Positions 9,831 through 55,116 of a stretch of 64,000 bases of DNA are shown piece by piece. The stretch spans positions 71,052,001 to 71,116,000 of the forward strand of contig NC_134468.1 of the NCBI RefSeq assembly GCF_964194025.1, read 5' to 3'. Source of the stretch: Convolutriloba macropyga (lineage: Eukaryota). Position 1 is the first letter of the stretch, and each line of letters begins with the position of its first letter. The position numbers and the translations under genes are program-made. The notes under the pieces are model-generated. The model made no database searches. It saw only the letters and a program-made list of their open reading frames with translations, and was not told the origin of the DNA.

Positions 9831-9836
9831 TTTATT
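9831..9836 (-). terminator. Candidate polyadenylation signal of the HCN gene
   Basis: AATAAA on the minus strand about 100 nt after the stop codon at 9934. Confidence 0.5.
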
Positions 9837-9933: not shown

Positions 9934-10743
9934 TTAGACTGCAGTTTCAGTGTCGTGAGTGGAAAGTCCGTTGGAAGAGAGGTTAATTGTGACGGGGTTG
10001 TTGTCCAAATAATGCATACGTCTTTTGGGGTGTTTCTTGGGAGGGTAACAGGTACAACTAGCACAATGGAAGTGACAGTTTTCAAATGATTCGTAGTCGA
10101 AATTGTCCAGAGATCCGGCTAGACATTGCTCAAAGGATTCTGGACGCGACCTTTGACCGGTTGACGCCCCACCGCTTTTTCGTCTGAGAAAGTGTTTGGC
10201 ATTTTTAATATATTTATGACTACTACTACTATTGTTATTGCTAGGATTATTACTATTATTAATATTATTGCTAGTATTTGGGGCATGATTTGGTAGAATA
10301 GATAATTCACCTTCATTCATATTACCGTCATAATTTTCAACAGGATCGTTTTCAACATCGACCAATTTTTCTGCGGCTTCGCTGTTAACACTCGCTGCAT
10401 TTAGTTCTTCTTCTTCAATTATGCTATTTTGTCCGGGACTGAAAAATTGTTGTTGTAGTTGTTGTTTATCTTTGTCGCCAGGTGAGGGGTAGTTCTGATG
10501 GGCACTAGAGGGCGATGTTGGGGAGGAGGCGGGTGTCTTTGAAGTGAGAGGGTTAGTAGGGGTGTTCGGATTAGTAGCACCTAGTGAAGTGTTGTTATTT
10601 TCTGCTGCAGTTGAGCAGGACTGTGACGTCATAGAAGTTGGTGTGGTGGCTGCCTGAGATAGAAGAGAGGTGGCTGTGTAGTGGTGTTGGATGCCATGGT
10701 ACTGCAATAGTTGGTCCAGTTTCTCTTTCATTGTTGATATCAT
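9934..10743 (-). CDS. HCN: HCN-like channel, probable terminal exon (low-complexity C-tail ending ETAV)
   Basis: 810-nt ORF preceded by the acceptor tgtttag. Phase 0 matches the donor at 24430, and the junction DMIEMNNR|MISTMKEKLDQLLQ reads as a continuous helix. Linkage across the 13.7-kb intron is inferred. Confidence 0.72.
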   Translation of the reverse strand: MISTMKEKLDQLLQYHGIQHHYTATSLLSQAATTPTSMTSQSCSTAAENNNTSLGATNPNTPTNPLTSKTPASSPTSPSSAHQNYPSPGDKDKQQLQQQFFSPGQNSIIEEEELNAASVNSEAAEKLVDVENDPVENYDGNMNEGELSILPNHAPNTSNNINNSNNPSNNNSSSSHKYIKNAKHFLRRKSGGASTGQRSRPESFEQCLAGSLDNFDYESFENCHFHCASCTCYPPKKHPKRRMHYLDNNPVTINLSSNGLSTHDTETAV

Positions 10744-24430: not shown

Positions 24431-24895
24431 CCTGTTGTTCATTTCAATCATGTCCGATTTATGAGCAAAATCCACTGCCTGCTTTCCTAGTTTTTCCAGC
24501 CTTTCCCTAGCTACAGATTCCATCGTCTCTCTCATTTGAGGAAACTCATTCAGAACCTGACTAAAATCAGCCTGGTCCAAACTGTACATGTTACAAAACG
24601 TCTCAGCTTTGATTGTTGCAGTCCTTCGCAGTTTTGCGAGTAGGCAAATCTCTCCGAAGTATGATCCTTCGGCTAATTGAGCGACACATGTTCCATCTGA
24701 GATTATGACGTCAACAGAGCCAGTTTGTATGAAGTACATCTTGTAGCCGAGAGTGCCTTCCTGAATGACTGTGTCGCCAGGCTGGTACACTTCAAACTGC
24801 AGCTTTGAGACGACAGCTGAGACGAAAGCAGGATCGGCGTCTTTGAAGAAAGGCACGACGCCTACCAGTTCCCTGCAATTGTAGTTCAACACTTC
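24431..24895 (-). CDS. HCN: HCN-like channel exon: end of C-linker and cyclic-nucleotide-binding domain
   Basis: EVLNYNCRELV...FEVYQPGD..IQEGTLGYKMYFIQ...GSYFGEICLL..RRTA...VARERLEKLGK. Acceptor ttcag and donor GTTAGT; 155 codons. Confidence 0.96.
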
Positions 24896-25314
24896 CTGAA
24901 AAACAGATAAAATCGCACATGATTGAATTTTTGGAATGAAATTTCATCGCTTAATTGAAAGGGTCAAACTTTTCGCAATAGCAAGGAAGGTTTTCACAGT
25001 TTTGAAAAAAACGGCTTAAAGAGTTAGCTCTGGTATTAAATGATTTTATCACCAATTGCGCAACGAGAAAATAGTCAATCTGGCTCTGTAACTTCTTTTA
25101 AAAGTCTTTTCTACACACGAGGACATGAAAGCACAAACTCTAGTAACCAAAGTGTATTTAACTGATCAATTTTTAGTACTACAAAATTAAAGATTAAATT
25201 AATTTTCATTTTAAAACTTAATTTGATGAATCTTTGACTATAAACGACTTTAAACGAACTTGAACAATAAATTACAGATCCAAGAAACATTCAAGACATC
25301 AAACTTTGACTTAC

Positions 25315-25461
25315 ATTTCGTAGGCAGTCGTTGAGTTCGTTGAGCACATCATTCTCGTTGAACATTTTGCCCTTGAATTTGTACTCGTAGTACTGGTGGA
25401 TTCTCACTTGCAATTCGGGTGGAATCTTCCGATGGTACATGTACTGTTCCACCTGCTTCAT
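25315..25461 (-). CDS. HCN: HCN-like channel exon: C-linker (not in the ORF track)
   Basis: MKQVEQYMYHRKIPPELQVRIHQYYEYKFKGKMFNENDVLNELNDCLRN; tttag / GTAAGT; 147 nt, phase 0-0. Confidence 0.96.
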
Positions 25462-26110: not shown

Positions 26111-28720
26111 TGTTCCGACCCACTTCAGTGGGGGGGAGGAACTACATACTTAATGGTTTTTTTTTTTCAAAAATTTGTTCAGTCAATTTTGGCCGATCGA
26201 TATGATCATCGTACAGGGCTGTGAGAGGTATCATTAAACAGCCCGTCCAGCCTATAACTCATAACGAAAAACATTTTTTTCATCTAGTATTTTCCAGGGA
26301 GTTATTGAGGTTTAAAGTTTTAGGAACAGTGGACTGATTTTCGTTGTTACTGTTCACGTTTTGCGTATTTTTACATAATTTTTTGACAATTTTGCCAAAA
26401 AGTGTAATAACTTTTTTTTATAAATTAGTGTCGATAATACATCTAAAAACAGAAGAGTGCTTTTGAAACGTTTGATTCTATTTGTGGCTAAAACTGTTGT
26501 AAATTTTACAAAACTTAGCCTTTATTCAACAAAAATAAGCTTTTTTGTCCACTTTGTTTAATTTTGCTCAATTAACACACCCTAAAACTGCTGATACAAT
26601 CTTCTAAGACTCCAATGAGGGCAAGATTTACTTGTGCATTCTTTTAGAGTGCTCTTGAATTAAAACTTTGCCGAAAATAAAGTCAAAATATACATATCCG
26701 TAACAATCGCAACAAGTACATGTTTCTAAATCACAAAAAACAGTAAAAAGGCAAGCTTGGGTGTTATCGCTGTTTTTTGAAAGTCCAGAAAAAATTAAAC
26801 TGTAATTAATCAGTCGATTTTGCTTTTTAAAATATTTTTACATTTTTGCTTTTCTGTACGTTTACTACAGAAAACAAACATTCAAACTAAAGGGTACTGA
26901 TGATAAGTTCAATTGGCTTCCTTTAGAGTTTCATGGAAACTGACTTAATTTTTTTAGTAAGTATCTTCGAAATAAAAAATGGATTATTGAGCTGTGCTAT
27001 TGTTTTTCTCTTTTTGGCCAACAACAGATGGTTAATGAAATCCAGTGTCATCATTGTTCTCATGTTTTTAATTTGAAAATATTTTTGCGGAATGATGTTT
27101 TAAGTAATCTGCCTGAAAACTACAAATTTTCACGCAATTTTTTGGTTTTTTGAACATCTTCCTACCTTTTAGTTTCTTTTTCCAGTCTTTTCACATATTT
27201 CACTTGTCAGATATCAAGTGCTTGGCACGTAAAAAGGGGCGCAACCGAACGCATCCGTTTTTCATTTAATAGAGGATGCTTTTAGCCGGCTCGAAGCCGT
27301 CTTCTAAAAGAATTGAATGGATCTTTTTGTTTTTCTTCATTTGTCGTTCTTTTTGTAAATTCTGGATAGTTGCAGATATTCTCGGCTTCCTACGGACAAG
27401 CAGAAGATTCTATTGCCCGATTATTTTAATAGCTAGTGTTTTTCATGACATTGAAATCAACTTTTTAAAATGTATGGTCTTAACTTAAAAATTTGAACTT
27501 TTCTACACATTTGGCTACTATCTACATAGTCTCATTAATTACAGGTCGTCTATAATATTGTTTGTGTTCACAAAAGGCATAAAAGAAACTATCTAATTTT
27601 TTTAGTGCATTGCCTATGGCTTTAATGGCTCCGATTTCACATTTTAAAGAAGTTTATTCATTCATTTTTTGATTTCAAGTGTTTTTGTCGCTCTTTTTGT
27701 AGTCCAATGATAGTTTCTGTTTAATTGCAGGTCTTGACGACTTGTTATGAATCGACAACGAAAATTATTTACCAATTACAGTTGAAAGCTAAATATTATT
27801 ATCACTGTTTTAAAATATATAATTGGATATATTTTAAAAACTTGCACTTTGCTGTTCTTTTTGAAATCATTGTTACCTAATCTCATTGATTACAGATCGA
27901 ATTTAAATTGATCAGTTTTGAAGAAGGACACAAATTAACATATTAAAGGTTTTTAGTGCGTTGCTTGTTGTTTTAAAGGCTTCAGAGCCGATTTTGCGAA
28001 TAAATGAAGTTGCGATTTTTGTCTATTAAATCGTTTTTTTGTGGACGTTTGACATATTCTGAATAATGACAGATTTCAATGGCGTCTGAAAAAAAATCAA
28101 AAAAGTAATAAGTTCTTTTGATAGCCCATGTTTTAAAGTCTTGGAATTTAATTGTATTCGAAAATTCAATCTATGGAATTTTTGTTTTCCACGTCTGAAT
28201 TTGTCGTTTGTTTTCGTAGACGTACGACATATTCTGGATGATGAAAATTCTCAATGTCTTCATATTGAGGCATGAAGGAGTTTAAACCAATTTAAAGATT
28301 CAACCGATGATTTTCATTATTTGAAGTTATTTGTTTTTAAAAAAAAGTTTTTTTTTCTTTGCCGTTTTTGACCATTTTCGTCTACTTGTTACTGAGTCTC
28401 ATCATGAAGTGGCCCCATGTTTTTTCTAGTGAATTCCAAACTAACGAACTAAATTGTTTAGTTTAAAAATTATTTCGCAATATTTTGACTTAGTATTTGA
28501 ATAATGGCAAGTCTTATCGGCCAATAAATGTGGCATTTTTAACTTTTCTAAGTGATTTGAGTTGGAAGAAATTTTTTATTCATAGACTAAAATTTTTTGA
28601 TCTATATAAGAGATTTGTGAAAGCTTTCCTATCTTTTCCCCATTTGGTAAAGAGTTAAGGCAAAATTGTGGATGATAAGGGGGGTCGAAACATTATGTGA
28701 GAACGCACTTTACCTCCTTA
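26111..28720 (+). mobile_element. Non-autonomous Helentron-like (HINE/DINE-1-type) element, copy 1
   Basis: 5' T-run plus TGTTCCGACCC; 3' GGGTCGAAACA, hairpin GTGaG-AA-CGCAC, then TCCTTA|TT. Shared 5' core GTCAATTTTGGCCGATCGAT. Confidence 0.75.
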
Positions 28721-29521
28721 TTGCCTTTAGAATCAATAAAATTACAAAACTTTTGCACTTAAAATATACATTTTAACATCTAAGCATCTAAAACATCTAA
28801 GCCTTCCAAAAAAGATATCTAAAAATTAGATGATTAGATTGCGTATTGTTTCATTTCAGTCAAAATTCAGTCAAAATTATTAGCATTTAGGCAGTCAGTC
28901 ATTGGGCGTTGTTTTGCATTCAAATTTTAATTAAGAATCAATTCATGGTACAAAAATAAGATCCAGCTAGAAATCATTGAATATTGCTACTTAACAATAC
29001 CGAAAGGGTATTTTCGGTGCATACTTCAATTGACCGTTAGAACTGGGAAAATAGCATAGATCACGCAAAACTCAAAAAGCCATGACGTCATTCAAAAAGT
29101 CAGAAACAGTCAAGCAAAGACTTTTCATAAAAAATAAGCAAAGGACAACAATAAATGCTTGAATTTCAAGAGCATTTAATATTTTTTGCTGATGGTTGAA
29201 AAGACCATCCCTTAAGGTACGCATTTTCAGATGACTTTCATCTCACGAACATCGTGAACAAAGTTTCAATTTGATCAAATGTAAAATGATTCTCAACGAG
29301 GATCACTTTCAACAAAAGTTGAAGCACTAATAATAGCTGGCTAATTTTTAATGTTATACATGGTTTCAAAAATTTTAAACCATTTTTGACTTAGACCCTA
29401 TTTCTGATTGCATAGCCTGTTGTGACATGAATTTTTACAACTGGCAAAAAACACCAGCATAATAAACGTTTGCTTTTTGAAGCAAACAACTTTTGTTTTT
29501 GAAGGTAAATGACCGTGTTAC

Positions 29522-29740
29522 CTTTTCGGTGAAAAGGCGGCGTGAATAATTCAACTGCTGTATGATGTTGGTTGCCTGCCCAATGAAGAGAGCGTAGCAA
29601 GTGGCTCCACTCAGCATAGACAGCATGAGGAGCCATAGATCCTGCATATTTCCAGGAGGGTGTTTGCCATACCCCATTCCCAACATGTGTGACATGGCAC
29701 GGAACAGAGACCAGCTGTACTGCTCCCTCCACGTGGCGTT
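29522..29740 (-). CDS. HCN: HCN-like channel exon: pore helix, selectivity filter, S6
   Basis: [29 protein letters not shown]...[29 protein letters not shown]; ttccag / GTAACA; 73 codons. Confidence 0.97.
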
Positions 29741-32700
29741 CTGGAACAAACAAGAGCTTGACTAACAAATACGGTTTTTCCTTTACGACCCAACTTCCCT
29801 GACTTTTAGGCGCCTTGATGTTCCAATTCAGCAAATTTAGAGGAAAAACTCTATGATAAGCTAATTTTCCTCTTTATTTTCAGTCAATTTTGGTCAATCG
29901 ATATATTTTGTAGAGTGAAGCAAGAAGGGTGTGTCATCAAAAAAGATCTCTGAGTCAAAACCAAAAAAAGTCGGAATCAATCAGTGAAAAAGATATTATC
30001 GAAGTGAAAGGTTATCTTTACCTTCATCGGTTCACGAAGGCTCCTCCGGCAGAAGCACGTGCAATAATAAACATACCCAGCAGATTGCCGGAAAATCGCC
30101 GCCATTGATTCCCATAACCCGATTGGGATTGAAAGAACAGAGAAAAATTGAAAAAAAACTGATTGATGTAAGAAAACTTTTTAAAATTGCGAACTATTTC
30201 GATTTCATTTGTTGTTAGACATGCTCCTGTTACTAAATGAGAGGATACATGGACTAGTTTAAAAACCAATAAAAAATTGAAATGGTAAGTACGACTTCAA
30301 GTAACTGGCATCTAAAATTGGGCTTTATGGGTTTATCCCCTTTCTTTTATTGATTGCCCTATTTCGATACATATTCTGTTGATTTCAGATTGCTTTGCTG
30401 GGCAACTGCTGTTGAAAGCAGACAATAAAACTAGCCTAGAGAAATCGAAACGATTTCACCGAAAATTTTGAAAAAAGCGGCAAAATGAGAAAAATTGAAA
30501 CACATTTTTATTTGACGAAATAAAAAACATAGCAGGACAAGTCCTGAACTACAATTAAAAAAAAATGATTAAGCAAACAAAAAACTAGACCTAGATTGGA
30601 CTATGAATGCATTGGGGAAAACATTTAGAAAAAATCCGATCAAAAAACCGAAAAACAGTTAAAACCAAAGTCAAAATGCCGCATGTGAACAAAAAACCAA
30701 TAACGAGAAAGCGAATTTTGAATGACAATGTGTGAACAGATCTTTAAAACCCCAAAGCCCAGTACATTTCACAGTCTTTGATTTGTAAAAAAAGCAGGAC
30801 CAGTCCTGGGCTACAACTCCAAGAATACAATCAAATCAACTGGCGACAACGATAACAGCCCCATTAAAAGAACAGCTTCCAATAACAAAAAAACAATACC
30901 AAGACTTCAACGAAAGTTAACAAAACTCCAAAGAAGTTGAAAGGAAATAAATTCACTTCATTTCAGAAAAATAGTGTTATCGAAGTTGTTATTCTCAATA
31001 ATAATAAAGTCAGCCACAAAAATGACAAATGCGAGTTTTGGAACAAACACCAACTCCTAAGAAGACCACTGCAGATGAAATAAACGGACAACGCAAACAA
31101 CAACTGACACAAAATGATTTTAACGAATATCATTGCCATTAAGTGTGATCAAAGTCAAGAAGCACGCAACTAAACATTGAAATCTTTAACATCTATTGCA
31201 CTCTCTATCAAAGAAAAAAATGAACTTCAAGAAAATAGTTGCGGGAACATGCCATTGAAGTAGCCTCAAAAGCCTGTAACAAAAAATTGAAAATTACAGC
31301 TCAATTACGCCTACTGTGGCAACAAACAAGACATAACAATAACTAGACTAACCAACAGGACAAAATCAATCCAAAAACTGTCAACAATATCAATAAAAAA
31401 ATCTCGAATAATTTTAGAAAAAAGTCTGGACAAAGATATTAAAACTTTCAGCTTTGAGTTGTAAAAAACCAGATAAACTCAATTGTGCGTAATAGAAAAA
31501 CCAAAGAGAATTATAATTAATGAAATTAAGTAGCAGAACATCAAAAACTACAAAAAAGTGCAAAATCCGAACCAGAATGAATACTTTTTGAAAGCAAGTA
31601 GTATCAAAGTAGTGAAAACTGTTTGAAATGAACAAATCTTAAAATTGATCAAAATGCAATATTTTTTAGAGAACATCTCTCCAGGAGTTGTTCATAGAAA
31701 GACTAAATGACAGAACGAAAAAATCTAAAAAAAAAATGAAAAATCCAAAAACTTTTATTAACATTTTTCCGAAAACAGTTAAAGTCAGTGTCGTTAAAGT
31801 CTTTATATTAATCTCAAATTAGTAAATTCCTTTAAAGCGAGCCATTGAGGCTCAGCACTGACGAGACTAAATAAAAAAAAACAACAAAAAGGTCTACAAA
31901 AAGAGATAAAAACTTTTATTTCTTGGAAACAAAAAGCGTCCAAATATTTCATAACCATTAGTTGCCTTTTGATGATGGCTTTAAACAAGTGCAACAATCG
32001 ACCACTAGAACATACGTATCGCCTCTTCAAAAAATCCATAGAGCAAACGAAAAGAAAAACAGTGAAAACAGAAGGCAAATTGCCACACTTGAAAATTCGC
32101 TCTGAAAAACCGGAAACATGTTTAAACACAATTCTTTCACTTCACTTTGAAAAGCACTTTGAAAAAATCACGCCTTTTAACTACCCGGTTTTCGATTCTC
32201 ACAACTCCAGAGTTACTAAAATTAGTACTCCAATTTGACTTCTCACTGATATTTAAGATGTTAAAAAAAGTGAACAGTTCTTAAAAAAAGAGAGACAGCA
32301 TACCAATACAATTCAAATTCTTTGAAATGTAAGAAATTAGGAGTGCAATAATGGCCTGCCGAGAAGATAAGGGCAGCTATTAAAAACTGACAATTCCGAC
32401 CCAACAAAATCATAATGTTGATTTCTTTGTATGAAAAAAAGTTACTTTTCTCGGTACCAAAGAAAATTTGCAACAACAATCTCATAACTGCTGCCGAAGA
32501 ACAACAGTGGGCAAAGTGTAGTCCAGGCATATTATCGCGAGGGAACAATCATAAAATGTATTTTTACAAACACCACCAAGACTAGCGTGATTTAAGTAAG
32601 GTGGTTAGCTTGATTTTCTGTCGTCCTGTGACGTAGGATTATCACAAAGTCAAAATTAACGGAAGGAGCAATGCCTCCACAGAACCAATGTATTTAAAAT

Positions 32701-38656: not shown

Positions 38657-38806
38657 CCGTATGTTGTCGTTGTCTATCCAGTTGCCGGGTGGGAAGTCGG
38701 AAAGCCGGGGGATGAGGAACATTATGCACCCGTTCAGGTGAGCAAACAGCAACATTGTCCCCACGACATTCACCACTCGCATCGCAACACTCGCCAAATT
38801 GAACAC
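38657..38806 (-). CDS. HCN: HCN-like channel exon: S5 and turret (different frame from the ORF track)
   Basis: VFNLASVAMRVVNVVGTMLLFAHLNGCIMFLIPRLSDFPPGNWIDNDNIR; ctgtag / GTCAGT; 150 nt, phase 0-0. Confidence 0.95.
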
Positions 38807-43091: not shown

Positions 43092-43362
43092 CTCCTCCCA
43101 TTGAGACGCATATTTCAGCAGCCGCGTTATGCGCAGCAACTTCAGAAGTGTCAAAAACTTGGCCAGTTTCAACATCCGGAGACCTTTGAGTCCCTGGGCG
43201 ACAGCCGCGTTGCCGCCTCCTCCCCCACTGCCCCCGTTAGACTGGGTCTCATTGCCATCCTCTGAGTCCGAGTCCTCTATCATCCAGTTGACGAGGGTGA
43301 TGATGTGATCGAAGGGCACTGAGCTGCAGAAGTCCATCAAGAACCAAGTCTTCAGATAATTC
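43092..43362 (-). CDS. HCN: HCN-like channel exon: S3, S3-S4 loop, S4
   Basis: (K)NYLKTWFLMDFCSSVPFDHI...KGLRMLKLAKFLTLLKLLRITRLLKYASQWEE; ttcag / GTCAGG; 271 nt, phase 2-0. Confidence 0.97.
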
Positions 43363-54870: not shown

Positions 54871-55116
54871 TTTGCAATTTTGGTAGAGTCTAGTATGCAG
54901 AAAGCACTCTTGGAAGACTTTGAGGGGAAGTAAGCAGTTCTAAAGTTCAAGGTCAGGTCAGCTATGAAGACTGAGTCAGTGAGGCTGGATAGGATGGCCC
55001 ACTGGATGCCTGTCTCGCCATTGGTGTTGTCCCCATGGTCCACGAAAGTGATGGCAATAGGAAGGAGCACAAGGTTCACCACAAGTACACACAGCATGAG
55101 GAAGTCCCACGTGATA
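54871..55116 (-). CDS. HCN: HCN-like channel exon: S1-S2
   Basis: ITWDFLMLCVLVVNLVLLPIAITF...DSVFIADLTLNFRTA...ILDSTKIA(K); tttcag / GTTAGT; 246 nt, phase 2-2. Joins the next exon as KIAKNYLKTWF. Confidence 0.95.

What the first reader, a model, noticed from the sequence alone, without database searches (positions are those of the whole stretch)
29666..29680. HCN-family channel with a non-canonical selectivity filter GMGYG
Seen: [13 protein letters not shown] (GGA ATG GGG TAT GGC). Known: HCNs have CIGYG and K+ channels T(V/I)GYG, and the first residue forms the innermost ion site. Both changes need multiple nucleotide substitutions, so a single sequencing error is unlikely. Inference: altered selectivity or block, or a non-conducting or modulatory subunit (compare fish HCN-like channels that conduct protons through the voltage sensor). 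With the S4, S5 (HLNG for HWDG) and S6 changes, this is the best candidate here for an undescribed channel subtype.
Basis: partly seen in the sequence, partly recalled or inferred. Interest (0 to 1): 0.75.

Follow-up and report, generated by a model that had tools for sequence, protein, structure and literature searches.

The report
Acoel HCN channel with GMGYG filter
This is a real, transcribed and strongly conserved pacemaker-type (HCN) ion-channel gene of the acoel worm Convolutriloba macropyga whose pore filter reads GMGYG instead of the near-universal CIGYG; it is a natural, so far undescribed variant whose effect on ion flow has still to be measured.

Summary
On the minus strand, 29680..29666 reads GGA ATG GGG TAT GGC (GMGYG). 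It lies in a clean GT-AG exon encoding the pore helix, filter and S6 of an HCN channel.

- **Gene:** seven exons in the window plus an Ion_trans_N exon about 6.8 kb past its end give an intact model of about 883 aa. It has an HCN-type S4, a C-linker and a CNBD, and is 47-48% identical to insect HCNs.
- **Base calls:** three DNA samples show no differing letters. A spliced mRNA contig from an independent 2016 study uses exactly these exon borders.
- **Species:** Convolutriloba macropyga, an acoel.
- **Conservation:** a related acoel genome has the same GMGYG with different codons. Synonymous sites are saturated (pS 0.71-0.83) while pN is 0.02-0.03.
- **Family context:** the genome also has CIGYG and SIGYG copies and a GIGYG sister gene. 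The two Gly-first genes form a clade (100/99) inside an acoel-only HCN clade.
- **Rarity:** among 349 HCN pores examined, only the orthologue has Gly first. No channel paper in the library mentions GMGYG.

It is not HCNL-like, because GYG and all S4 charges are kept. HCN2 C400A and C400S conduct normally, so a conducting channel with modestly altered permeation or gating is most likely. This is a new variant of a known kind, and its function is untested.

The parts
54871..55116 (-). Exon A: S1, S1-S2 loop, S2 and start of the S2-S3 linker (...ITWDFLML...NFRT...ILDSTKIAK). The first base completes a Ser codon begun in the N-terminal exon outside the window.
   Evidence: Acceptor TTTCAG|, donor |GTTAGT. 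Pfam Ion_trans, E 2.3e-5. tblastn to HCNs of several phyla.
43092..43362 (-). Exon B: S3, an unusually long acidic/Gly-rich S3-S4 loop, and S4 (LKGLRMLKLAKFLTLLKLLRITRLLKY...QWEE). All nine HCN S4 positions are kept (8 K/R plus the central Thr).
   Evidence: Acceptor GTTCAG|, donor |GTCAGG, phase fits exon A. Pfam Ion_trans, E 1.4e-6. The loop insert is absent from paralogue C5.
38657..38806 (-). Exon C: short S4-S5 linker and S5 with HLNG (the other acoel paralogues have HWNG).
   Evidence: Acceptor CTGTAG|, donor |GTCAGT. The loose end of the mRNA contig at 29741 reads the last 30 bases of this exon. Paralogue comparison.
29522..29740 (-). Exon D: N-glycosylation sequon NAT, pore helix, selectivity filter, S6 and the start of the C-linker. 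It aligns to human HCN1 residues 338-410. Gate residues Y386/T394/Q398 are kept and V390 is Ile. D401 is replaced by Asn.
   Evidence: 0 differing letters in 3 DNA samples and in the spliced mRNA contig. 72 of 73 residues are identical in the orthologue at 83% DNA identity.
29666..29680 (-). The five filter codons GGA ATG GGG TAT GGC = GMGYG (HCN1 C358-I359-G360-Y361-G362).
   Evidence: The orthologue uses GGC ATG GGG TAC GGC for the same peptide.
25315..25461 (-). Exon E: C-linker ([34 protein letters not shown]...).
   Evidence: Acceptor GTTTAG|, donor |GTAAGT. The mRNA contig joins 29522 directly to 25461 and 25314 to 24894.
24431..24895 (-). Exon F: end of the C-linker and the cyclic-nucleotide-binding domain, with the cAMP-contacting Arg-Thr (LRRTAT) intact.
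   Evidence: Pfam cNMP_binding, E 6.2e-18. The best solved relatives are HCN4/HCN2 CNBDs at E 1e-48 to 1e-49, against CNG at 1e-18. The donor AGG|GTTAGT at 24431 is used by the mRNA contig.
9934..10743 (-). Exon G: 269-residue low-complexity (Ser/Thr/Asn/Pro-rich) C-terminal tail and the TAA stop. AATAAA lies at 9836..9831, and the mRNA contig ends near 9802.
   Evidence: The 30-base loose end of the mRNA contig at 24431 matches 10714-10743 exactly and uniquely. Acceptor GTTTAG|, with an open frame to the stop.

Best explanation
The stretch is the selectivity-filter coding part of an intact, expressed gene for an HCN-family (hyperpolarization-activated, cyclic-nucleotide-modulated) cation channel subunit of the acoel Convolutriloba macropyga.

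Shown here:
- The gene has eight or more exons over about 61 kb.
- It encodes the HCN-specific N-terminal domain, S1-S6 with a full HCN-type S4, a GYG pore, a canonical S6 gate (Y/I/T/Q), a C-linker and a CNBD with the cAMP-binding Arg-Thr.
- It is spliced into mRNA.
- It has an orthologue in a related acoel with the same GMGYG under strong purifying selection.
- It belongs to an acoel-specific expansion of HCN genes. In that expansion Cys->Gly arose once, before the split from the GIGYG sister gene on chromosome 12. Ile->Met followed on this lineage.

Inferred:
- The protein tetramerises into a conducting, hyperpolarization-activated, cAMP-sensitive cation channel.
- HCN filters bind ions through backbone carbonyls, the Cys side chain faces away from the pore, and Ala or Ser there leave HCN2 permeation unchanged. 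Gly is therefore expected to be tolerated.
- Gly-Met in place of Cys-Ile (more backbone freedom, plus a bulkier residue packed behind the filter) probably tunes conductance, Na/K ratio or block.
- The changes that accompany it probably shift gating. These are Asp->Asn at the HCN1-D401 position (shared with the GIGYG gene), Trp->Leu in S5, and a long acidic S3-S4 loop.
For: - **Sequence and exon structure:**
- **Domains:** Pfam Ion_trans and cNMP_binding. Ion_trans_N at 54.9 bits, 6.8 kb upstream on the same strand.
- **Family identity:** 47-48% identity to insect HCNs over 508 aa. At E<=1e-5 all solved-structure hits to the pore exon are HCN1/3/4. CNBD hits to HCN score 1e-49 against 1e-18 for CNG.
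- **Transcription:** the spliced 3,232-nt contig in run X5 uses the predicted junctions with 0 mismatches. DNA contigs from 3 samples are identical.
- **Orthologue L001:** the pore exon is 83% identical in DNA and 72/73 in protein. pS is 0.71 and pN 0.023 for that exon, and pS 0.83 and pN 0.031 over 834 nt. Synonymous differences occur inside the filter codons.
- **Paralogues:** CIGYG, SIGYG and GIGYG copies in the same genome.
- **Tree:** acoel clade 100/100 and Gly-first clade 100/99.
- **Literature:** HCN2 C400A/C400S give robust currents with unchanged reversal potential (PMC3506978). The Cys side chain points away from the pore, and natural variants SIGFG and CIGYS exist (PMC9614928).
Against: - No functional data exist for Gly at the first or Met at the second filter position in any HCN.
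- Gly is more flexible than Ala and could collapse or widen the filter.
- The long stem branch (0.77) leading to this gene shows a burst of change that could reflect a shift of function rather than fine-tuning.
- Expression rests on one assembled contig of one run. Tissue and level are unknown.
- The exon B-C and A-B junctions and the S3-S4 insert are not directly confirmed by RNA.
- The tree has no CNG/KCNH outgroup and no vertebrate or cnidarian HCNs.
Confidence: 0.6

Rival explanations
1. It is a non-conducting or dominant modulatory subunit. The Gly-Met filter would be ion-impermeant in homomers, and the protein would act by co-assembling with the canonical CIGYG paralogues of the same animal to tune or damp their current.
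For: Several HCN paralogues with canonical filters coexist in the genome and could be partners. Small filter changes such as CISYG in HCN4 or GYG->AAA make dominant-negative subunits (PMC7306766). The stem branch is long and several coupling residues are altered.
Against: GYG itself, the pore-helix Phe, the S6 gate, S4 and the CNBD are all under strong constraint. The known silencing changes hit the GYG glycines, not the first two positions. Ala or Ser at the first position conduct normally. A sister gene keeps Gly with the canonical Ile, which suggests that Gly alone is compatible with a working pore.
Confidence: 0.2
2. It is a conducting channel with a qualitatively different selectivity (for example clearly more Na+- or Ca2+-permeable, or K+-selective) or different block pharmacology. 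That would make it a functionally distinct HCN subtype.
For: Two of the five filter residues differ from a motif kept in 336 of 349 HCN pores examined. The variant has been frozen by selection since it arose. C400T in HCN2 does shift the reversal potential and Cs+ block, so this position can matter.
Against: Selectivity in HCN depends largely on filter conformation set by residues outside the pentapeptide, and these are conserved here (PMC9614928). Small side chains at position 1 were neutral. Selectivity cannot be predicted from sequence (PMC7576140).
Confidence: 0.15
3. It is an HCNL-like channel that conducts protons through the voltage-sensing domain and has a plugged pore.
For: There is an unusual S3-S4 loop next to S4.
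Against: HCNL1 lacks GYG altogether (WPFLE/WISTK), and HCNL2 has SYG. Both carry Met at the third S4 charge, which is required for proton flux, and the family is fish-specific (PMC7306766). Here GYG is intact. The third S4 charge is Lys and all other charges are kept. The gene sits in an acoel-only clade.
Confidence: 0.03
4. It is an artefact or a decaying pseudogene: a mis-assembly, a sequencing error or a dead duplicate.
For: None was found. The idea is listed only because a filter variant in a multi-copy family could be a dead copy.
Against: All exons are open with canonical splice sites. Sequence is identical in 3 DNA samples, and a spliced mRNA exists. pN/pS is far below 1 against an orthologue with saturated synonymous sites.
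Confidence: 0.02

Closest known systems
Classical HCN (Ih / 'funny') channels: vertebrate HCN1-4, sea urchin SpIH, insect Ih
   Same: Same domain order: Ion_trans_N, S1-S6, C-linker, CNBD. The S4 is long, with 8 basic residues and a central Ser/Thr. GYG, the pore-helix Phe and the N-glycosylation sequon before the pore helix are kept. The S6 gate is Y-(V/I)-T-Q, and the CNBD has Arg-Thr. The gene is 47-48% identical to insect HCN over 508 aa, and its best solved relatives are HCN1/3/4.
   Different: The filter is GMGYG instead of CIGYG. Asn replaces the conserved Asp after S6 (HCN1 D401). S5 reads HLNG instead of HW(D/S)G. The S4-S5 linker is shorter, as in all acoel copies. There is a long acidic/Gly-rich S3-S4 loop, and four S4 Arg are replaced by Lys.
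Natural HCN filter variants already noted in the literature: SpHCN2 (SIGFG) of sea urchin and Ciona HCN with CIGYS (PMC9614928)
   Same: These are lineage-specific HCN paralogues that depart from CIGYG while keeping the rest of the HCN architecture. Their permeation is likewise uncharacterised.
   Different: Those variants keep a polar first residue (Ser/Cys) and Ile at the second position. Here the first residue has no side chain and the second is Met. SIGFG, CIGFG and SIGYG were seen among the 349 pores examined, but Gly-first was seen only in this gene's orthologue.
The GIGYG paralogue of the same genome (G000 chromosome C12, about 49.13-49.19 Mb)
   Same: It is the sister gene (clade support 100/99). 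It shares Gly at filter position 1, the [11 protein letters not shown] post-S6 signature with Asp->Asn, and the pore helix [12 protein letters not shown].
   Different: It keeps Ile at position 2 and Trp in S5 (HWNG). Its pore exon is split inside the filter by an inferred GC-AG intron, and its branch is much shorter (0.27 against 0.77).
HCNL1/HCNL2 proton channels of fish (PMC7306766)
   Same: They are also divergent HCN paralogues with a non-canonical filter.
   Different: HCNL has no GYG (or has SYG), a Met at the third S4 charge, a non-conducting pore, no cyclic-nucleotide gating, and is found in fish only. This gene has none of the sequence hallmarks.
Engineered HCN2 C400A / C400S / C400T (PMC3506978)
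   Same: The same filter position is altered. Ala and Ser (small side chains) are the nearest experimental proxies for Gly.
   Different: Gly itself and the neighbouring Ile->Met were not tested. They are single mutants in a mammalian background, not a co-evolved natural protein.

Membership tests
HCN channel family | HCN-specific N-terminal domain (Pfam Ion_trans_N, PF08412) immediately before S1 | tested here: met
   54.9 bits (cut-off 27) at G000:C1:71122788-71122913, minus strand, about 6.8 kb beyond the window end. The exon ends TTC AG|GT, and its phase fits exon A.
HCN channel family | Six-TM voltage-gated-type core with a long S4 of seven or more K/R, interrupted in the middle by Ser/Thr (feature described in PMC7576140) | tested here: met
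   S4 = K..R..K..K..T..K..R..R..K in register with insect and human HCN. Pfam Ion_trans hits on exons A, B and D.
HCN channel family | Pore with the GYG signature in an HCN-type pore helix (...LFKAMSHML-xxGYG) | tested here: met
   [15 protein letters not shown] aligns without gaps to HCN1 338-410 and HCN4.
HCN channel family | Consensus filter CIGYG (typical of most but not all known HCNs, PMC9614928) | tested here: not met
   The filter is GMGYG. The consensus is a frequent trait rather than a strict criterion: 13 of 349 HCN pores examined deviate from it.
HCN channel family | C-linker plus cyclic-nucleotide-binding domain with the phosphate-binding Arg-Thr | tested here: met
   Pfam cNMP_binding, E 6.2e-18. 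HCN4/HCN2 CNBD structures match at E about 1e-49, and LRRTAT aligns to GRRTAS.
HCN channel family | Closer in sequence to HCNs than to CNG, KCNH or other CNBD channels | tested here: met
   The pore exon hits only HCN1/3/4 among solved structures at E<=1e-5. For the CNBD, HCN scores 1e-49 and CNG 1e-18. All 150 best representatives are HCN-type. A rooted tree with CNG/KCNH outgroups was not made.
HCN channel family | Activation by hyperpolarization, mixed Na+/K+ permeability, cAMP shift of activation | not testable with these tools
   This needs electrophysiology of the expressed cDNA.
HCNL proton channels (fish) | Met replacing the third S4 arginine | tested here: not met
   The third charge position is Lys (LRMLK). 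The criterion comes from PMC7306766.
HCNL proton channels (fish) | Filter without GYG (HCNL1) or with SYG (HCNL2) | tested here: not met
   GYG is intact.
HCNL proton channels (fish) | Member of the fish-specific HCNL clade | tested here: not met
   The host is an acoel, and the gene groups with acoel paralogues at 100/100. HCNL sequences themselves were not in the tree.

The most novel reading that the evidence does not exclude
Acoels evolved a distinct HCN subtype with a Gly-first filter (G-I/M-GYG), loss of the post-S6 coupling Asp and, in this gene, a re-made S5/S3-S4 region. Its permeation or gating would be qualitatively different from Ih: for instance markedly altered Na/K/Ca selectivity or block, a large voltage-independent component, or an obligatory regulatory role in heteromers. 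It would be a natural experiment showing which filter and coupling residues make an HCN pore weakly selective.
Probability: 0.3. Interest if true: 0.65.

Novelty: new variant of a known kind. Interest (0 to 1): 0.45.

Why it matters
Why HCN channels pass Na+ despite a K+-channel GYG filter is still debated, and natural filter variants are few (SIGFG, CIGYS) and uncharacterised. This gene offers a variant with no side chain at the innermost position and a Met behind the filter. It comes with built-in controls in the same genome: a GIGYG sister gene plus CIGYG and SIGYG paralogues. That gives a ready-made swap series for electrophysiology and simulation. It also documents an HCN gene-family expansion in Xenacoelomorpha, a lineage important for reconstructing early bilaterian nervous systems. 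If the channel turns out to behave like ordinary Ih, the result is still useful, because it would show that positions 1 and 2 of the HCN filter are permissive.

Tried and rejected
- **Profile search for a full-length named orthologue.** The query was a Tenebrio HCN backbone plus this gene's exon rows. It was swamped by insect HCNs and gave nothing useful. The earlier alignment A1 was discarded because MAFFT scattered the short exon fragments.
- **Word-indexed search with the orthologue fragment P0003.** It found no further GMGYG or Gly-first sequences. The length window excludes full-length proteins, so NCBI's own model of this gene, if there is one, was not seen.
- **Remaining paralogue loci.** Those copies are known only from their pore, CNBD and N-terminal exons.
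- **N-terminal exon inside the window.** None was found. It lies beyond the window.
- **COX1 for species identification.** Stop-free pieces were too short to use as a query. COX1 served only to show an invertebrate mitochondrial code. BiP gave the species.
- **Literature search for 'GMGYG'.** It returned only unrelated strings.
- **Structure and complex prediction.** These were not run. The spliced protein has no reference and may not be typed in, and a predicted fold cannot report ion selectivity.
- **Rejected readings.** Pseudogene or artefact. An HCNL-type proton channel.

Full report
**Observation.** On the plus strand, 29666-29680 reads gccataccccattcc. The gene is on the minus strand, where this is GGA ATG GGG TAT GGC = GMGYG in the frame [17 protein letters not shown]. 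The motif lies in a 219-nt exon (29740..29522) with a ttccag| acceptor and a |gtaaca donor. The exon encodes 73 residues that HMMER aligns without gaps to human HCN1 338-410 and to HCN4. GMGYG therefore corresponds to C358-I359-G360-Y361-G362.

TGY->GGY and ATH->ATG are single steps. Two separate changes are still needed, and the reads settle the matter in any case.

**Are the base calls real?** Logan contigs of three DNA samples from one study (runs X1, X2, X4) cover 28052-29900 with no differing letters. Run X5 comes from a different study (2016) and is labelled 'DNA?'. It contains a 3,232-letter contig whose consecutive parts lie on 24431-24894, 25314-25461 and 29522-29741 with nothing between them. 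That makes it a spliced mRNA, and it has 0 differences. Its loose ends read the end of the S5 exon on one side. On the other side they read a 30-mer that occurs once in the window, at 10714-10743. So 'confirm by cDNA' is in effect done for the filter exon, and 'reads show CIGYG' is excluded.

**Gene model.** Seven exons in the window, all GT-AG and all phase-compatible, give an open frame of 768 codons:
- A, 55116..54871: S1-S2.
- B, 43362..43092: S3, a long acidic/Gly-rich loop, and S4.
- C, 38806..38657: S4-S5 linker and S5.
- D, 29740..29522: pore and S6.
- E, 25461..25315: C-linker.
- F, 24895..24431: CNBD.
- G, 10743..9934: a low-complexity tail and the stop. AATAAA follows at 9836..9831, about 30 nt before the end of the mRNA contig.

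No N-terminal exon lies in the window. A whole-assembly scan with Pfam Ion_trans_N found one on the same strand about 6.8 kb past the window end (G000:C1:71122788-71122913, 54.9 bits). It ends TTC AG|GTTAGT, and these bases join exon A's first base to make a Ser codon. From the first ATG of that open frame the model has 883 residues.

Pfam finds Ion_trans and cNMP_binding. The model is 47-48% identical to insect HCNs over 508 residues. The CNBD exon matches HCN4/HCN2 CNBD structures at about 1e-49, against about 1e-18 for CNG.

**Functional residues.**
- S4 keeps every HCN position: eight basic residues (four Arg->Lys) around a central Thr.
- The acidic residues of S2 and S3 are kept.
- The pore-helix Phe is kept.
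- The N-x-S/T sequon before the pore helix is kept.
- The S6 gate residues are kept (HCN1 Y386, V390 as Ile, T394, Q398).
- The CNBD Arg-Thr is kept.

**Species.** The mitochondrial COX1 of the assembly uses the invertebrate code. An intron-less BiP gene is 100% identical to 'BiP-like [Convolutriloba macropyga]'. The published genome note gives 1,175.98 Mb, the size of this assembly (PMC13650328). The animal is an acoel (Xenacoelomorpha).

**How unusual is the filter?** An exhaustive phmmer search of the pore exon against 1.84 billion cluster representatives found 756 relatives. Of the best 150:
- 138 read CIGYG.
- 12 read SIGFG, CIGFG or SIGYG.
- Only P0003 reads GMGYG.

After two further searches, 349 HCN pores were in hand and P0003 was still the only Gly-first one. 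No channel paper among about 8.4 million full texts contains GMGYG. A review lists CIGYG as the rule, with SpHCN2 (SIGFG) and a Ciona gene (CIGYS) as the known exceptions (PMC9614928).

**Conservation.** P0003 is a prokaryote-style ORF call on a 287-kb ENA contig (L001). That contig is not from this assembly, because the assembly has no such copy. It carries the orthologue.
- The pore exon is 83% identical in DNA, yet 72 of 73 residues are identical.
- The C-linker and CNBD exons are similarly conserved.
- The introns no longer align. One is 390 nt instead of 4 kb, and the CNBD exon has an extra intron.
- By Nei-Gojobori counting, pS is 0.71 and pN 0.023 in the pore exon. Over 834 nt, pS is 0.83 and pN 0.031. 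Synonymous sites are saturated, so omega is far below 0.05.
- The filter is written GGC ATG GGG TAC GGC in the relative and GGA ATG GGG TAT GGC here.
- The single amino-acid difference in the exon (NAT/NAS) keeps the glycosylation sequon.

**Family context.** The assembly holds further HCN pore exons:
- CIGYG on C1576.
- CIGYG on C3, and on C4567, which is probably the same locus.
- SIGYG on C5.
- A gene on C12 whose pore exon is split inside the filter. With the only frame-preserving junction (a consensus GC-AG donor, TAG|GCAAGT) it reads GIGYG.

Homology-projected models of C12, C5 and C1576 separate shared traits from specific ones:
- Asp->Asn at the HCN1-D401 position and the [11 protein letters not shown] signature are shared only by the two Gly-first genes.
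- Trp->Leu in S5 (HLNG) and the long S3-S4 loop are specific to this gene.

An IQ-TREE analysis (LG+C20+F+G4; 22 rows including arthropod and mollusc HCNs) gave the following:
- One acoel clade (100/100).
- The Gly-first clade (C12,(this gene, orthologue)) at 100/99.
- A long stem to this gene (0.77), followed by almost no change between the two species.

Three unnamed RefSeq rows in the tree are probably echinoderm, judged only from a shared contig length. The tree has no vertebrate or cnidarian HCN and no CNG/KCNH outgroup. The acoel rows are partial.

So Cys->Gly occurred once before the C1/C12 duplication. Ile->Met came later on this lineage. The duplication predates the split of the two species.

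**Mechanism.** In K+ channels the first filter residue (Thr) contributes its hydroxyl to the innermost site. In HCN structures only the two inner sites form. They are built from carbonyls, and the Cys side chain points away from the pore (PMC9614928). In mouse HCN2, C400A and C400S give robust currents with unchanged reversal potential. Only the bulkier C400T shifts selectivity, Cs+ block and gating (PMC3506978).

That makes a conducting pore the default expectation for Gly. The extra backbone freedom of Gly and the larger Met packed behind the filter are plausible tuners of conductance, Na/K ratio or block.

Together with the S5 and S3-S4 changes, altered gating is at least as likely as altered permeation. 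All of this is inference. Sequence cannot predict selectivity (PMC7576140).

The HCNL analogy is rejected. HCNL1 lacks GYG, HCNL2 has SYG, both need a Met at the third S4 charge, and the family is fish-specific (PMC7306766). Here GYG and all S4 charges are present.

**Verdict.** The gene is a bona fide HCN-family member with a natural Gly-Met filter variant. It is transcribed, it is held by purifying selection across two acoel species, and it belongs to an acoel-specific Gly-first subgroup not described in the searchable literature. It is a new variant of a known kind. Interest is moderate, because the closest experimental proxies predict a tolerated, possibly subtle change. The genome itself supplies an attractive natural swap series (CIGYG, SIGYG, GIGYG, GMGYG) for testing.

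Noticed in passing
window 26170-26356 (intron between exons D and E): An extremely abundant repeat. Summed contig word depth is 2.6-3.3 x 10^5 in the three DNA runs, against about 50-90 in the flanks. Many contigs break or join here (loose ends at 26174, 26213, 26290 and 26321).
   Followed up: no
window 42961-42800 and 41124-40963; also 41496-41128 and 40799-40383: The intron between exons B and C contains a tandemly duplicated block of about 1.8 kb. Identical 54-aa and near-identical 41-68-aa open frames recur at that spacing. This is probably a duplicated transposon fragment.
   Followed up: no
window 43170-43270 (inside exon B): A run of about 28 residues, acidic and then Gly-rich (EDSDSEDGNETQSNGGSGGGGGNAAVAQ), is inserted in the normally short S3-S4 loop. 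It is G+C-rich, unlike the local introns, so it is probably coding. It is absent from paralogue C5. It is not directly confirmed by RNA.
   Followed up: partly
L008 1497-1566 and 2184-2338 (G000:C12:49157840-49158681): The sister gene's pore exon is split within the selectivity filter (HMLGI-G|GYG) by an intron of about 620 nt. The only frame-preserving donor is a GC (TAG|GCAAGT ... CCAG|GT). The spliced filter reads GIGYG.
   Followed up: partly
L001 10256-10649 and 12278-12885 (related acoel, ENA ERZ25878734 ctg23842l): The orthologue has a 390-nt intron where this genome has 4 kb. It also has an additional intron of about 600 nt inside the CNBD exon (after ...IQTGS). This shows intron gain or loss and strong intron-size change between the two acoels.
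   Followed up: partly
run X5: The run is recorded as 'DNA?' but behaves as a transcriptome. Its contig over this gene is spliced, and intronic coverage is near zero.
   Followed up: yes
G000:C1:72903638-72903763 (+), 1.8 Mb from the window: A further Ion_trans_N match (67.6 bits) lies in a 358-aa open frame on the same chromosome. No pore exon was found nearby. It may be the 5' part of the CIGYG gene whose later exons sit on the unplaced contig C1576.
   Followed up: no
The post-S6 Asp (HCN1 D401) is indeed Asn here, and also in the orthologue and in the GIGYG sister gene. But the S6 gate residues proper (HCN1 Y386, V390, T394, Q398) are conserved as Y, I, T, Q.
   Followed up: yes
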